The position numbers and the translations under genes were made by a program. From positions 1 to 64,000 of the IMG/VR virus record IMGVR_UViG_3300036766_002289: a DNA stretch of 64,000 bases. One strand, given 5' to 3'. Below, piece after piece: positions 21,124-48,568 of the stretch. How positions within the stretch are numbered: position 1 is the stretch's first letter; every line of letters starts with the position of its first letter. The notes below the pieces were generated by a model. It was given only the letters and a program-made list of their open reading frames with translations. It made no database searches and was not told where the DNA came from.

Positions 21124-21241
21124 GAGTGGGTAGCTAAAAGATTGCTTTGGCAACTTAGACAAGTAATTGTCTCCAACCCTGAAGCTTACAAGCACTAGTA
21201 TTTGAAACTAAAGAATGTTGGTTCAAGTCCAACCCCACTCG
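21124..21241 (+). ncRNA. tRNA-like RNA (UUG loop) with a permuted Y-RNA-like module in the D-loop
   Basis: acceptor GAGTGGG/CCCACTC; T arm GTTGG-TTCAAGT-CCAAC; insert CTTAGAC-aagtaatt-GTCTCCAA...CTTACAAGC. Confidence 0.75.
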
Positions 21242-23310: not shown

Positions 23311-23403
23311 TGGCTGCTAGCTTAACGGTATGAAGCGCTTGTGAATTCGGGCTTTAAATCCTGATGAAACTTGAGAAGTAGGGTTCAACTCCTTACGTGG
23401 CCA
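23311..23403 (+). ncRNA. tRNA-like RNA with expanded anticodon arm
   Basis: TGGCTGC/GTGGCCA, GCTT/AAGC D arm, TTCAACT T loop; about 38-nt anticodon region with internal TCGGG/CCTGA hairpin. Confidence 0.6.
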
Positions 23404-23404
23404 C

Positions 23405-37539: not shown

Positions 37540-37614
37540 TGCGGTGGTTTCAGTGCTGGTACTGATCTCTGCCTTTGAAGCAGATGTACGCTGGTTCAAT
37601 TCCAGCCGCCGCAG
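37540..37614 (+). tRNA. tRNA-Gln(TTG)
   Basis: TCTGC-CTTTGAA-GCAGA; atypical D arm. Confidence 0.75.
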
Positions 37615-38639: not shown

Positions 38640-38713
38640 GGCTCCGAAACCTTTAGTTGGATGAGGTCCAGTCTTTTAAACTGGTTAAGAGGGTTCGATT
38701 CCCTACGGAGCTA
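38640..38713 (+). tRNA. tRNA-Lys(TTT)
   Basis: CCAGT-CTTTTAA-ACTGG. Confidence 0.75.
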
Positions 38714-41800: not shown

Positions 41801-41872
41801 GTGGGTGAAGCCAAACGGTGCGGCATCTGTGTGTGAATCAGAATATAATGGGTTCAACTCCCATCATCCACC
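41801..41872 (+). tRNA. tRNA-His(GTG)
   Basis: loop GTGTGAA; C73. Confidence 0.7.
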
Positions 41873-42396: not shown

Positions 42397-42488
42397 TGCG
42401 GTGTCATCTAATGGCAAGATACGGGTCTCAAGGGTCAAACAGCCCATAAATGAAGCCTGAAATGTAGGTTCGACTCCTACCGCCGTAA
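42397..42488 (+). ncRNA. tRNA-like RNA with about 21-nt insertion in the anticodon loop
   Basis: TGCGGTG/CGCCGTA, ATCT/AGAT, CGGGT..GCCTG with internal GGGT/GCCC hairpin, GTAGG-TTCGACT-CCTAC. Confidence 0.65.
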
Positions 42489-44504: not shown

Positions 44505-44577
44505 AGCTCTACTGTTGGTGGGTACAACGGGTGGCCTCCAAAACCACTGCTTGCGGGTTCGATTCCTGCTAGGGCTG
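44505..44577 (+). tRNA. tRNA-Trp(CCA)
   Basis: loop CTCCAAA; A1-U72, G73. Confidence 0.75.
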
Positions 44578-45158
44578 CTTATAGAAAGGTGATTAAATGA
44601 CAATTTCAATAGACATTGGTAAGTTTGAGGCCGAGATTGAATATATAAGTGCAATCGGTAAACGCAGCCGCAAGGTGGAATTAGAAGTTATGTGGCATAG
44701 TTGTTGGGTGTATCAAGTAACCTACTATAGGCCAAGAGATGCTGAAGATCATGTTGTAGTCGTAACTAAAGACTGGTATCCACCCAACATCAATATTAGT
44801 TTCACTCCAGAACAATTTGATAAGGTAGTAGAATTATATCCTTTGGCTCCCAAAAATGAGAGAGATCAATGTTATAAGCCATTTTATGAAGATTATGATT
44901 TGAGTAGGGGCATGTTTGATTTTGGGGATGATGTTCTATTTCAAGCGTTCAAAAGCCCACAACCGACCGATGATGAAAGAGTATATTTAGTGCGACATTG
45001 TTTTTCTTATGGCACACCTACACCTGATACAGCTGTTCTTGGCTTACATGTTGATGATCTAAAAAAATTGAAAGAATTGCTTGATAGTAAGAAAAATGAA
45101 ATTTTTTATTCTGGATGTAAAATATCTTGGCCATCTAAAATATTAGGTGATCTTTAAT

Positions 45159-45231
45159 TCCTCAGTAGCTCAATAGGTAGAGCGCAAAGCTGTTAACTTT
45201 GATGTTCCTCGTTCGAGTCGAGGCTGAGGAG
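45159..45231 (+). tRNA. tRNA-Asn(GTT)
   Basis: CAAAG-CTGTTAA-CTTTG; canonical cloverleaf. Confidence 0.9.
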
Positions 45232-45734
45232 CTTATGAATCTTACATGGTTTGGTAAAATGGGCATGGTGTTTATGATAGCATCTTGTATGCTAGGTGTT
45301 GTGTCGATGGCAACTAGGTCAGTAACCATGTTATGGTGTTCTGCCGCATTTAGCGTCATTGCTGGCGTATTAATGACATTTGAAGCAACTAAACACAAGA
45401 GATAAAATTATGAACTTAATATTTATGTTAACTTTGTGTTGCGGTGAAATCCCTACTGCCGAAGATACTAATCTTCAAACTAAAAAGGCGATTGTCGAGA
45501 TTCAGAGAAAAGCAGAAAAGGATTTTGAATCTTATATTGAGTTGAATATAAGGGACGCAGTAAGGAAAGGGAAATATACCACATCTTTGATTATTCAGGA
45601 AGATTTTAATGTTCTTCCTTATGTGAAGGCTGTATTAATGCCAAAGTTAGAAAAACTTGGGTATAAAGTTGAATTAAAGATTCCTCCGAAAGATTCGATT
45701 GGTAATCCAACTTTGTATATCAGGTGGGAGTAGT

Positions 45735-45953
45735 TTATTTTTCTGCGAATGGTGGACGGGCAGTACCAGGGAAATCTTGATTTAACGTTCCAAGTGGTTG
45801 TGGTTTCTTGATTTGATATTGGGCTGTTTGGCCCTTTTTGATAGGGATCATTAAATTAGGATTGATTGGGACTTGCATAGGATTTGGGCCGTTTGGAGTC
45901 ACCATTTGTTGTGGGCCAGGTTCTAAGCCTTCAAGCCATTGTCTGAAGTTCAT
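45735..45953 (-). CDS. small Pro/Gln-rich protein (MNFRQWLE N-terminus)
   Basis: coupled to upstream ORF; shared N-terminal motif. Confidence 0.55.
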   Translation of the reverse strand: MNFRQWLEGLEPGPQQMVTPNGPNPMQVPINPNLMIPIKKGQTAQYQIKKPQPLGTLNQDFPGTARPPFAEK

Positions 45954-46501
45954 TGAGGTAATCCTGTTCTTAACTTTTTAGCGCCTGCTGGTTTGTAAAT
46001 TCCAGTGCCAACGTATTGTGTTGTATCTGGTTGCATTGGTGGAGAGCTAAAATATTGGTTAGTATTGCCGACTGTTTGTGGTGTTAGTGTCATTGTTGGG
46101 GAATACCCTAATGACCTACCGAATTCAACTGTTTTTCTGCTAATTGGGTCTTTTTGTAATACACCCATTACGTAATTCCTGGCGAGTGTTCTTCCTGCTT
46201 GTCGTCTATCGCCTATTTTGGCTTTAGAAGCTATTTTTCGCATTGTTCCTTGAATAATTTCTTGTCTGTTAGTAGGGTTGCTTAGGTAGTCGGCGGCGTA
46301 GTGTAACCAGGAAAAAGGTGGTGGGCCTTGTTGAGAATCTGGTCCCCTTCTCATGGTTCGTGTAGGTTCGGTACTCATTTTAACGATGGCATTGTATGCA
46401 GCTTCTGCATCCTCGGCTGTTTCCGCTTTCGAGTTACCTCTTGTATAGACGCCTAAATTTATACCTTGTGCTTCACGAATTTCAATCCATTCTTTAAACA
46501 T
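45950..46501 (-). CDS. hypothetical protein (MFKEWIE N-terminus)
   Basis: TATAAATA just upstream on the minus strand. Confidence 0.6.
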   Translation of the reverse strand: MFKEWIEIREAQGINLGVYTRGNSKAETAEDAEAAYNAIVKMSTEPTRTMRRGPDSQQGPPPFSWLHYAADYLSNPTNRQEIIQGTMRKIASKAKIGDRRQAGRTLARNYVMGVLQKDPISRKTVEFGRSLGYSPTMTLTPQTVGNTNQYFSSPPMQPDTTQYVGTGIYKPAGAKKLRTGLPQ

Positions 46502-46543
46502 ATGGTATTTATATAAAATTTTTGATTTTTGTTGAATAATTTA

Positions 46544-46594
46544 GCCCTCATAGTACAATGGCAGTATAACTGAGTCCGATTCTCAGTGAGGGCT
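46544..46594 (+). ncRNA. mini-tRNA lacking the anticodon arm
   Basis: GCCCTCA/TGAGGGC acceptor, TAC-AATGGCA-GTA D arm, CTGAG-TCCGATT-CTCAG T arm, nothing between D and T arms. Confidence 0.65.
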
Positions 46595-47046
46595 TTGGAT
46601 AATGGAAGAATTATATTTCTGTATGCACTTGACGGAAAATGAGCATTACATAGCTGAATGGGATTTTCAAGAAAAATGTGAAGTATTGGGACTGACTATC
46701 GTTTATTACAGGAAGTTGAAGGAAGGTCATGTGCCGATGTATCGTGAGATTAAGGTGAAGGGTGAACGGCTCGCTATAAATCAATTTAAGAAATTCTTGA
46801 AAGAGAAATTTTATACAGAGCAAATTGAGAGAAACCCGCACAAAGTTTAGCCTTTTTTTGGAGAATAATTATGTTTACAGAGAAAGAAATCCAGACGATT
46901 AAACTTGCTTTAAAGGCATTTAAATTGCAGATGTGTTTTGATTCAAGAAGCACTACTAAGGATTTTAATCCAGTCCTTTTAGATGAGTTAACTTCTCAAA
47001 TGGAAAATTTTTATAAGACTTTATTGGGAAAAGTCGATAACCTTTT

Positions 47047-47117
47047 GCCACTATAGTATAATGGCATTACGTCTGTTTCGTAATCAGAAATTGAGGGTTC
47101 GATTCCTTCTAGTGGCT
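47047..47117 (+). tRNA. tRNA-Thr(CGT)
   Basis: loop TTCGTAA; cloverleaf. Confidence 0.85.
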
Positions 47118-47119
47118 CT

Positions 47120-47227
47120 GTGGAATTAGTGTAAATGGACAGCACGTAGGAGAAAGCAACAGTAAAGCCTTTTTAGGTGAAAATGATGCTCATCCCTGAA
47201 GTGACGGTTCGAATCCGTTATTACACC
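47120..47227 (+). ncRNA. tRNA-like RNA with greatly expanded anticodon arm
   Basis: GTGGAAT/ATTACAC, GTG/CAC D arm, GACGG-TTCGAAT-CCGTT; about 50-nt anticodon region. Confidence 0.6.
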
Positions 47228-47577
47228 TGACTATAGCTTAGTTGTACCAATGGTGGTGTTCCGATTTTTCAATAAAAAAGGAGGCTTCACATGCGGTTCT
47301 CATTGGCTATGGTATTTTTGCTTTTTGTGTCCCCGTGTTTCGCTGATAATTTTCTTTCTGTTCTAAAGAAAGATCAGAAAATCGTCTTGAGGGAAGGTCC
47401 ACAGGGCTATCAAATTGTCATTTACAAGAATTTCGGCGTTGAGCCTGCGTCATTTAAGGTTATTGAGGTTGGTACAGACTATATTGTGGTTGAAGATGCG
47501 GTTGGTTTGAACGAAATTCGTATTCCGATTTACTCAATTAAGTCGATTACAACGACTAAACTTCCAAAGGTTAAAGA

Positions 47578-47970
47578 ATGAAGTTTGACAGTGAAGGTAA
47601 ATTGGAGTATGGTCCAGGTCGTAGAGCGGTGGTCTGGGTGGATCAAGGGATTTCGGATTTTTACCGAAAGTTAGTTCCTAAGTATTATTATGCTCAGCCA
47701 CAGATGTATCCAGCCCACATTACGGTTGTGAGATTACGTTTAGAAGATGCAAAAAATCTAGATGTGTGGAATAAATACAATTTGGAAGCAATTCCATTTG
47801 TGTATGACAGTGAAGTGTATTTTGATGGAACTTACTTCTATTTGAATGTCCAAAGTGATAGGATAGGTGACATTCGTGAAGAGTTAGGGTTGCCTAGATT
47901 CCGTTTTGGGGATTTAGGGGCTGCGAAGCAATGTTATCATATTTCTATTGGGAATGTTAAAAATGGTTAA
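47578..47970 (+). CDS. 2H phosphoesterase family protein
   Basis: two HxT/S motifs (PAHITV, YHISIG) with IREELGL between them. Confidence 0.7.
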   Translation: MKFDSEGKLEYGPGRRAVVWVDQGISDFYRKLVPKYYYAQPQMYPAHITVVRLRLEDAKNLDVWNKYNLEAIPFVYDSEVYFDGTYFYLNVQSDRIGDIREELGLPRFRFGDLGAAKQCYHISIGNVKNG

Positions 47971-48568
47971 TTTGTGTTTGTTTTTGTTTGCGGCATTACT
48001 TGCCTATTTTAGGTTTCATATGTCATCACATCCAGTGAGCATAGATGGAAGTTATGAAGCAATAGCGCACTTGTTTGTTGGTGGGTTGCTTGGAGCATGG
48101 TTGGTGTCGCGTAAATATTTTTATTTAGTTTTGGTGGTAGCTTTATCTGGTTTTGAGTTATTTTCGTTTTTAAGTAGGTGAGGAGATTTGGATGGTCAGT
48201 AATGCTTTTCGCAAGATGATGGGTGATCGTCATCAGAATTCTGATGGTTTCACTTACGTCTATGGGGCCATTAAGGATGGTTCCACTGCCCGTCCCGCAA
48301 CTGCTTCCACCAAGAAGTCGATTCGTAGCGACAAGAGGAAGGTCAGAAATCAGGAACTTAGGCAGATTGAGAAGGATTCATATGAGAGACGGTAAGGCAA
48401 AAATTGAGCAAGCTGACGGCTCATCTGGTAATTGGCATCGTTCCCTTAAAAAGAGGAAGTTGAGAAGTGAGCGCCGTCGAGCCAAAAGGAATCCAGAATG
48501 TCAGACCGCGTATCGTAGATACAGTGGTTACGAATTGTAAGATTGGCCCGTTAAGATTTATATTATTT

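What the first reader, a model, noticed from the sequence alone, without database searches (positions are those of the whole stretch)
46544..46594. 51-nt mini-tRNA with no anticodon arm
Perfect 7-bp acceptor stem, D arm with GG and 5-bp T arm joined directly by TAA. The elbow is kept while the decoding arm is deleted cleanly. It could be an RNase P processing signal for the downstream mRNA or a tRNA-mimic decoy.
Basis: partly seen in the sequence, partly recalled or inferred. Interest (0 to 1): 0.6.

Follow-up and report, generated by a model that had tools for sequence, protein, structure and literature searches.

The report
Broken tRNA-Thr gene, anticodon arm deleted
The 51-base "mini-tRNA" is real, but it is the remnant of an ordinary threonine tRNA gene that lost its anticodon arm through a 20-base deletion seen only in this huge phage, so it is most likely a dead tRNA gene rather than a new kind of RNA.

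Summary
Window 46544-46594 (+) folds into a perfect 7-bp acceptor stem, a 4-bp D arm with GG in its loop, a 2-nt linker and a 5-bp T arm. There is no anticodon arm. A descriptor of this shape finds it once in the 390-kb phage genome and never in 30 shuffled genomes.

The functional reading is not supported. The closest relative, a Logan contig (L008), has the same two flanking genes at 88% and 93% protein identity. At the same spot it carries a complete 71-nt tRNA-Thr(GGU) that scores 65.4 bits in Rfam. The window copy is that gene minus 20 nt.

The deleted block is bounded by a short direct repeat: CTG of the anticodon stem and CT(G/A) of the T stem. That pattern fits replication slippage across the hairpin.

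The two substitutions that are clearly specific to the mini lineage, U55C and C25U, hit positions invariant in eight full-length Thr tRNAs. The deletion junction occurs nowhere else in IMG/VR or the GTDB genomes, and the 5' half (searched instead in JGI metagenomes) matched only full-length tRNA-Thr(GGU) genes of another phage.

An independent assembly of the probable source run reproduces the sequence, so it is not an assembler error. Verdict: a tRNA-Thr(GGU) pseudogene, of low interest.

The parts
46544..46594 (+). Remnant of a tRNA-Thr(GGU) gene: acceptor stem, D arm, 2-nt linker, T arm and discriminator U, with no anticodon arm or variable loop
   Evidence: Sequence. Fold. Orthologous by two-sided synteny to the full tRNA-Thr(GGU) at L008 2160..2090 on the minus strand. 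43 of 51 aligned positions are identical.
46568..46572 (+). Deletion junction. AA is followed by CTG. The CTG can be read as anticodon-stem bases 28-30 or as T-stem bases 49-51 of the parent, and 20 nt are missing between the two copies.
   Evidence: Pairwise alignment with L008. Alignment of nine Thr tRNAs. Three paralogs or orthologs carry the T stem CTGAG/CTCAG, so CTG is probably the ancestral 49-51.
46576..46576 (+). C at tRNA position 55, which is U in all eight full-length Thr tRNAs compared. A mini-lineage-specific change at a universally conserved T-loop base.
46567..46567 (+). T at tRNA position 25, which is C in all eight full-length Thr tRNAs. It turns G10-C25 into G-U.
46588..46592 (+). 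GAGGG inside the 3' acceptor strand, 9 nt before the ATG of the 82-aa gene. A possible Shine-Dalgarno site (inference only). In L008 about 10-12 more bases of trailer separate the tRNA from that ATG.
   Evidence: Sequence. Alignment.
45950..46501 (-). 183-aa ORF of unknown function, divergent from the remnant. It travels with the tRNA-Thr(GGU) gene in the only relative that has it.
   Evidence: No Pfam or PHROG match. One homolog at 88% identity, located next to the full tRNA.
46602..46850 (+). Conserved 82-aa gene directly downstream of the remnant
   Evidence: 80% identity to the L002 homolog and 93% to the L008 homolog. 17 relatives found.
47047..47118 (+). Intact tRNA-Thr(CGU), the next tRNA downstream. 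Conserved in L008 and L002.

Best explanation
The element is a dead copy of a tRNA-Thr(GGU) gene.

Origin. The common ancestor of this phage and of the L008 phage carried a complete tRNA-Thr(GGU) between the 183-aa gene (minus strand) and the 82-aa gene (plus strand). In the lineage of the window, 20 nt were lost. These were one copy of a CTG direct repeat (anticodon-stem bases 28-30 and T-stem bases 49-51) plus the 17 nt between the copies. Slipped-strand or microhomology deletion across the anticodon hairpin is the likely mechanism (inferred). That event removes the anticodon stem-loop and the variable loop and leaves the other three arms untouched, which is why the excision looks clean.

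Consequences. The RNA cannot decode. It also lacks the anticodon bases that ThrRS uses for recognition (established for E. coli ThrRS, from my own knowledge). After the deletion it picked up U55C and C25U.

If it is transcribed with the 82-aa gene, it probably still folds. It may still be cut by RNase P, which needs only the acceptor/T-arm stack (established knowledge; not tested here). That would be a leftover property, not a selected function.

Shown: homology, orthology, the deletion and its privacy. Inferred: the slippage mechanism and the lack of function.
For: 1. Two-sided synteny. L008 carries the 182-aa homolog (88% identity) and the 82-aa homolog (93% identity). Between them sits a tRNA-Thr(GGU) called by ARAGORN and scored at 65.4 bits by Rfam.
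2. The mini aligns to that tRNA over all 51 bases, 43 of them identical, with a single 20-nt gap.
3. Another phage's tRNA-Thr(GGU) (L010 4001-4071) matches the mini's 5' acceptor strand and D arm at 23 of 24 bases and has the identical 3' acceptor strand. So the mini's stems are inherited from a normal tRNA and were not remodelled.
4. The deleted block is bounded by CTG / CT(G or A).
5. The two substitutions that outgroups assign to the mini lineage both fall in columns invariant in all 8 full-length Thr tRNAs. One of them is the universal U55.
6. The genome has no other tRNA-Thr(GGU). This is therefore the gene's only copy, and it is broken.
7. Privacy. The junction pattern is not found in IMG/VR or GTDB genomes. 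The 5'-half pattern is not found in IMG/VR, and in JGI metagenomes it finds only full-length tRNAs.
8. An independent Logan assembly of the probable source run is identical over 45900-47200.
9. The tRNA array holds other aberrant or weak tRNA genes, as expected where tRNA genes are gained and lost.
Against: - All three remaining stems are still perfectly paired, so little decay is visible. With only two lineage-specific substitutions, relaxed constraint cannot be shown statistically: by chance both would hit invariant columns with p of about 0.18 (21 of 50 columns are invariant).
- Only one close ortholog exists, so the age of the deletion is unknown.
- No RNA data exist for this phage, so expression and processing are untested.
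- A second small deletion in the 3' trailer has brought GAGGG of the acceptor strand to 9 nt from the ATG of the 82-aa gene. This could mean the remnant has been co-opted as a 5' leader.
Confidence: 0.82

Rival explanations
1. The remnant is kept as a processing signal. It is transcribed as the 5' leader of the 82-aa gene. RNase P and a 3' endonuclease cut at the tRNA-like fold and so define the mRNA 5' end, as plant mitochondrial t-elements and the MALAT1 mascRNA do.
For: - The fold is stable alone and in context.
- The acceptor/T-arm stack, G53-C61, G18 G19 and C56 are retained.
- It lies 7 nt upstream of a conserved gene.
- In these phages ORFs commonly start within a few bases of tRNA 3' ends (for example L002 5171/5177), so tRNA-mRNA co-transcripts are probably normal here.
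Against: - The full tRNA in L008 would do the same job, so nothing selects for the deletion.
- Relatives L002, L011 and L012 express the same gene without any tRNA-like element upstream. There it is coupled to an upstream ORF.
- Cutting after the discriminator would strip the only Shine-Dalgarno-like motif (GAGGG) from the mRNA.
- The form is not conserved beyond one genome.
Confidence: 0.1
2. The remnant is a decoy or nuclease-proof tRNA mimic. An anticodon-less tRNA-Thr would soak up or escape a host tRNA-targeting defence nuclease.
For: - Phage tRNAs are known counter-measures to tRNA-cleaving defences.
- P2-OLD kills by cutting off the anticodon arm of tRNA-Thr(UGU) at paired CNG motifs in the anticodon stem, and phage tRNA-Thr genes rescue the cell (PMC12445682).
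- The L008 parent has CTG/CAG in its anticodon stem.
- The mini is of Thr origin and lacks exactly that arm.
Against: - This is an analogy only.
- A mimic without the anticodon stem lacks the motif such a nuclease recognises, and it cannot replace the lost decoding capacity.
- The form is private to one genome.
- U55C weakens the elbow a decoy would need.
- Ligating OLD-type cleavage products would leave bases 41-48 in place. These are absent here, so it is not a retro-copied amputated tRNA either.
Confidence: 0.04
3. Assembly or sequencing artefact: the real genome holds the full tRNA, and the 20-nt gap arose in assembly.
For: - All supporting data probably come from one sample.
- Contigs drop rare variants.
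Against: - Two assemblies agree base for base: the IMG record and Logan's contig of run X1, at depth about 12.
- A 20-nt loss inside unique sequence is not a typical assembler error.
- The remnant also differs from its ortholog by 8 substitutions, so it is not a mis-join of that allele.
Confidence: 0.03

Closest known systems
tRNA pseudogenes and degenerate tRNA genes in the tRNA arrays of large phages
   Same: It derives from a bona fide tRNA gene and sits among about 48 tRNA genes. It has lost a part essential for decoding. Other aberrant tRNA genes lie nearby.
   Different: The loss is one tidy internal deletion that removes a whole arm, rather than truncation or scattered mutations. The remaining arms still pair perfectly.
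tRNA-Thr(GGU) of the L008 phage (Logan contig) and of L010 (JGI contig Ga0315284_10005622)
   Same: - Orthologous position, flanked by the same two genes in L008.
- 43 of 51 bases identical to L008.
- Acceptor stem identical to L010, and 5' acceptor strand plus D arm 23 of 24 identical.
- G1-C72, C2-G71, C3-G70 and discriminator U as in all Thr tRNAs of these phages.
   Different: It lacks 20 nt covering the anticodon stem-loop and variable loop. It has C55 and U25.
tRNA-like processing elements (plant mitochondrial t-elements, MALAT1 mascRNA) and minihelix substrates of RNase P, RNase Z and the CCA-adding enzyme (from my own knowledge)
   Same: An acceptor/T-arm 'top half' placed next to an mRNA. 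In principle the tRNA end-processing enzymes could recognise it.
   Different: Those elements are conserved and shown to be cleaved. This one is private to one genome, its ortholog is an ordinary tRNA, and no RNA data exist.
Anticodon-arm 'amputation' of tRNA-Thr by P2-OLD (PMC12445682)
   Same: The product is a tRNA-Thr without its anticodon arm. The parent anticodon stem has a CTG/CAG pair of CNG motifs.
   Different: That is RNA cleavage of a host tRNA-Thr(UGU) into pieces. Here a DNA deletion in a phage tRNA-Thr(GGU) gene is involved, and its end points do not match the OLD cut sites.

Membership tests
Canonical tRNA (Rfam RF00005) | Four-arm cloverleaf including an anticodon stem-loop | tested here: not met
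   There is no anticodon arm: 2 nt join the D stem to the T stem. ARAGORN makes no call.
Canonical tRNA (Rfam RF00005) | Score at or above the family gathering threshold (29 bits) | tested here: not met
   No RF00005 match at gathering level, nor at E <= 10 in a 351-nt search. The L008 ortholog scores 65.4 bits.
Canonical tRNA (Rfam RF00005) | 7-bp acceptor stem, U8, A14, G18 G19, G53-C61, and a T loop with U54 U55 C56 R57 A58 | tested here: inconclusive
   All are present except U55, which is C at 46576.
tRNA-Thr(GGU) gene lineage (orthology) | Same genomic position, flanked by orthologous genes on both sides | tested here: met
   The 183/182-aa gene is 88% identical and the 82-aa gene 93% identical. 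The tRNA lies between them in L008.
tRNA-Thr(GGU) gene lineage (orthology) | Sequence homology over the retained arms | tested here: met
   43 of 51 bases identical to L008. The 5' acceptor strand plus D arm match L010 at 23 of 24 bases, and the 3' acceptor strand is identical.
tRNA-Thr(GGU) gene lineage (orthology) | GGU anticodon, i.e. a working Thr decoder | tested here: not met
   The anticodon is deleted.
tRNA pseudogene | Derived from a functional tRNA gene and missing an essential part | tested here: met
tRNA pseudogene | Signs of relaxed constraint after inactivation | tested here: inconclusive
   Both lineage-specific substitutions hit invariant columns (U55C, C25U), but n = 2 and p is about 0.18.
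tRNA-like mRNA processing element (t-element or mascRNA type) | Conserved as a tRNA-like, non-decoding structure across relatives | tested here: not met
   The ortholog is a full tRNA. Other relatives lack any such element at the spot. No other copy of the junction exists, and the 5'-half search found no other mini copy.
tRNA-like mRNA processing element (t-element or mascRNA type) | Cleavage by RNase P or RNase Z in vivo | not testable with these tools
   No RNA runs hold this phage.

The most novel reading that the evidence does not exclude
The deletion product is expressed, and selection keeps it as an anticodon-less tRNA-Thr 'top half plus D arm'. It would then act either as an RNase P-dependent 5'-end maker or leader for the 82-aa gene, or as a decoy for host enzymes or defence nucleases that grip the tRNA elbow or attack tRNA-Thr. 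That would make it a naturally occurring, genome-encoded tRNA without a decoding arm.
Probability: 0.05. Interest if true: 0.6.

Novelty: new member of a known kind. Interest (0 to 1): 0.15.

Why it matters
It matters little beyond annotation. It shows that this 390-kb phage has lost its only tRNA-Thr(GGU), although ACU and ACC make up about 57% of its Thr codons in long ORFs.

It is also a tidy example of how a hairpin bounded by a 2-3 nt repeat can be excised from a tRNA gene, leaving a tRNA-like fold that gene finders miss.

As a caution for genome scans: a 'clean' loss of an arm is not evidence of design. One close relative was enough to settle the question. The remnant would become interesting only if it proved to be expressed and retained.

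Tried and rejected
Searches that found nothing:
- Megablast of 45000-48000 against GenBank phages: no match.
- Exact and degenerate DNA patterns of the element in IMG/VR: none. In GTDB genomes: none.
- In JGI metagenomes, the 5'-half pattern found only full-length tRNA-Thr(GGU) genes of an unrelated tRNA-rich phage.
- The search for related loci with the 183-aa or the 82-aa protein alone found nothing. An alignment of two homologs and the 130-aa neighbour gave L002-L007. None of these has a mini-tRNA.
- Pfam and PHROGs on eight neighbouring ORFs gave nothing useful.
- No RNA run holds the phage.
- Run X2 holds a relative at about 90-95% identity that has the 183-aa gene, but no contig covers 46472-46603.

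Ideas considered and dropped:
- The sigma-70 promoter scan found 5 sites against 5.0 expected. The one hit (TTGAAT ... TACAAT) lies inside the D arm and is just the usual tRNA D-arm sequence.
- Compensatory changes as evidence of selection. Against L002 tRNA-Thr(UGU), the acceptor pairs 4-6 differ on both sides. I dropped this once L010's tRNA-Thr(GGU) showed the identical acceptor stem. The 51:63 difference from L008 is best placed on the L008 lineage, because G001 and two Thr(UGU) genes share the mini's CTGAG/CTCAG.
- A retro-copied OLD-amputated tRNA: rejected because the end points do not fit.

Not done:
- A general database search for anticodon-less tRNA-like genes. The conserved tRNA bases give fewer than the 14 specified letters the pattern tool needs.

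No alternative genetic code was used.

Full report
SETTING. The window is the first 64 kb of a 390,039-bp IMG/VR virus record. Its G+C content is 39%, and ARAGORN tRNA genes in it. It is therefore a huge phage with a large, mostly plus-strand tRNA array. The probable source is a sediment metagenome.

THE OBSERVATION.
- It has a 7-bp Watson-Crick acceptor stem, followed by U8 and A9.
- The D stem has 4 bp, one of them G-U, around the loop AATGGCA, which holds G18 G19.
- Two A's form the linker.
- The T stem has 5 bp, including G53-C61, around the loop TCCGATT.
- The 3' acceptor strand follows, and then discriminator U.

RNAfold gives this three-way junction as both the minimum-energy and the centroid structure: -18.6 kcal/mol, z = -3.2, and 0 of 200 shuffles fold as well. 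The fold survives in 121 nt of context.

A descriptor for a tRNA without an anticodon arm finds this one site in the whole genome. It finds none in 30 Markov shuffles. I wrote the descriptor after seeing the element.

ARAGORN does not call it. Rfam finds no tRNA match at gathering thresholds or at E <= 10.

One detail departs from a canonical elbow: position 55 is C, not U.

WHAT IT COMES FROM. The element aligns with the threonine tRNAs of this phage and its relatives. They share G1-C72, C2-G71, C3-G70, discriminator U, the D loop and the T arm.

The decisive evidence came from the flanking genes. The 183-aa minus-strand ORF at 45950-46501 has no Pfam or PHROG family. It has a single homolog among 5.8 billion proteins, at 88% identity. 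That homolog lies on a 2,873-nt Logan contig, L008.

L008 also carries the 82-aa gene that follows the mini-tRNA in the window, at 93% identity. It carries tRNA-Thr(CGU) and the next genes as well, and the DNA is 84-87% identical overall.

Between the two flanking genes, at the position of the mini-tRNA, L008 has a complete 71-nt tRNA-Thr with anticodon GGU. Rfam scores it at 65.4 bits.

The window element aligns to that tRNA over all 51 of its bases, 43 of them identical, with one 20-nt gap. The gap covers the anticodon stem-loop and the variable loop.

A complete, high-scoring anticodon arm cannot plausibly have been inserted into a mini form, so the direction of change is full tRNA to mini.

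A tRNA-Thr(GGU) of a quite different tRNA-rich phage (L010) supports this. Its acceptor stem is identical to the mini's, and its 5' acceptor strand plus D arm match at 23 of 24 bases.

HOW THE DELETION AROSE (inference). In the parent the sequence runs AA-CTG-(17 nt)-CTA/G-AG. The first CTG is bases 28-30 of the anticodon stem. The second triplet is bases 49-51 of the T stem.
- The mini itself, the tRNA-Thr(GGU) of genome G001 and two Thr(UGU) genes all have CTGAG/CTCAG as the T stem. The ancestor therefore most likely had CTG at both places.
- Loss of one repeat plus the intervening 17 nt gives exactly the 20-nt deletion and the junction AACTGAG now seen at 46568-46574.
- A hairpin bounded by a short direct repeat is a classic substrate for replication slippage.
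- The neatness of the excision therefore follows from where the repeat happens to lie. It is not a sign of selection for an elbow-only RNA.

A second difference lies in the 3' trailer. About 10-12 nt present in L008 are absent in the window, again next to a repeated GGCT. The direction of that change is unknown.

IS THERE EVIDENCE OF SELECTION ON THE REMNANT? No.

Eight positions differ between the mini and its L008 ortholog. With L010 and G001 as outgroups they sort as follows:
- A15G and the compensatory 51:63 pair fall on the L008 lineage, the working tRNA.
- The 5:68 pair and position 20 cannot be assigned to either lineage.
- Only C25U and U55C fall clearly on the mini lineage.

Both of these hit columns that are invariant in all eight full-length Thr tRNAs compared. 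U55 is also universal in tRNAs. This is what relaxed constraint predicts, but two events prove nothing: chance alone gives p of about 0.18, since 21 of 50 columns are invariant.

For comparison, the neighbouring intact tRNA-Thr(CGU) is 66/71 identical between the two phages (read from the alignment), against 43/51 for the remnant pair.

HOW WIDESPREAD IS IT? It is private, as far as the collections show.
- The next relative, G001 (L002, 373 kb), shows 80% identity in the 82-aa protein. It has neither the 183-aa gene nor any tRNA-like element at this spot. An 80-aa zinc-finger-like ORF is translationally coupled to the 82-aa gene there instead.
- L011 and L012 look the same.
- G001 keeps a tRNA-Thr(GGU) in its main array between tRNA-Ile and tRNA-Gly. 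In the window genome those two genes are 11 nt apart.
- The window genome has no intact tRNA-Thr(GGU) anywhere.
- Patterns spanning the junction find nothing in IMG/VR or GTDB genomes.
- The pattern covering the 5' half finds nothing in IMG/VR. In JGI metagenomes it finds only the full-length L009 and L010 genes.

IS IT AN ARTEFACT? Probably not. A Logan contig of run X1 (9,898 nt, depth about 12) covers 45900-47200 with no difference. X1 is probably the same sample, so this shows independence from the assembler, not from the data. Contigs cannot show a minor full-length allele.

WHAT IT DOES. The best reading is a tRNA-Thr(GGU) pseudogene.
- It cannot decode.
- It lacks the anticodon bases that E. 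coli-type ThrRS needs (my own knowledge).
- It may still be transcribed, because it lies in the 100-nt divergent gap between two genes and 7 nt upstream of the conserved 82-aa ORF.
- It may still be a substrate for RNase P, which recognises the acceptor/T-arm stack (established knowledge, untested here).
- GAGGG in the 3' acceptor strand lies 9 nt before the ATG. It may now act as, or mask, the ribosome-binding site (inference).

The rivals are a selected processing signal and a decoy against tRNA-targeting defences. One such defence is P2-OLD, which cuts the anticodon arm off tRNA-Thr (PMC12445682). Neither rival is excluded, but neither has positive support. Together I give them about 0.15.

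COMPARISON WITH KNOWN THINGS. The element works like nothing in particular. It is related to tRNA-Thr(GGU) by descent and fails the membership test for a functional tRNA. It resembles minihelices, t-elements and mascRNA only in shape. It belongs with the degenerate tRNA genes that occur in phage tRNA arrays. Several other odd tRNA genes lie in this same window.

VERDICT. Derivation from a tRNA by loss of the anticodon arm is confirmed. The element is ordinary, at interest 0.15.

Noticed in passing
window 21124-21241 (+): Rfam scores this as a tRNA (44.4 bits) only when a 50-nt insertion in the D loop is skipped. The anticodon loop reads AUUUGAA (UUG, Gln-like). ARAGORN does not call it. It could be an interrupted or decaying tRNA gene, or one with an unusual D-loop insert.
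   Followed up: partly
window 23312-23404 (+): ARAGORN calls a 93-nt 'tRNA-???' with a 2-nt anticodon, right after tRNA-Leu(UAG). It is another aberrant tRNA-like gene.
   Followed up: no
window 41801-41872 and 42397-42488 (+): Rfam calls these as tRNAs (47.5 and 43.4 bits) but ARAGORN does not. The second is 92 nt with a long insert in the anticodon/variable region. Three more tRNAs score only 29-35 bits: 37541-37613, 38641-38712 and 44505-44577.
   Followed up: no
G000:C1:170512-170586 (outside the window): ARAGORN calls a tRNA with anticodon CUA (labelled Pyl), i.e. an amber-suppressor-type tRNA. I did not test whether the phage recodes TAG, and I used no alternative code.
   Followed up: no
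window 45950-46501 (-) and the whole record: The 183-aa protein is on record on a 590,099-nt contig, whereas the IMG/VR record is 390,039 nt and classed as 'provirus'. The virus record may have been trimmed from a longer contig.
   Followed up: no
window 45954-46598 versus L002 5764-6019: This is a replacement polymorphism. The window and L008 carry the 183-aa ORFan plus tRNA-Thr(GGU). G001, L011 and L012 carry an 80-91-aa Cys-rich ORF coupled to the 82-aa gene at the same place.
   Followed up: partly
window 46853-46989, ORF 46871-47056 (+): About 140 nt are present in the window but absent in L008, where the stop codon of the 82-aa gene abuts tRNA-Thr(CGU). The stretch creates a 61-aa ORF that overlaps the tRNA start by 10 nt.
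   Followed up: no
window 47578-47970 (+): A 130-aa protein matches phrog_12204 (E = 1e-15) and has a faint 2H-phosphoesterase (2H-SAK) Pfam hit (E = 0.065). It is conserved at 82% in G001 and sits inside the tRNA array. It may be an RNA-end-healing enzyme.
   Followed up: no
L010 4202-4586 (+), JGI contig Ga0315284_10005622: An unrelated phage-like contig carries 33 tRNA genes and a tmRNA (tag peptide ANDNAHADVALKAA). Its tRNA-Thr(GGU) has the same acceptor stem as the window remnant and differs at one base of the 5' acceptor strand plus D arm.
   Followed up: no
whole genome G000: ACU and ACC, the codons read by the lost tRNA-Thr(GGU), make up about 57% of the Thr codons in 200 ORFs of at least 200 aa. 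The phage keeps two Thr(UGU) genes and one Thr(CGU) gene.
   Followed up: partly
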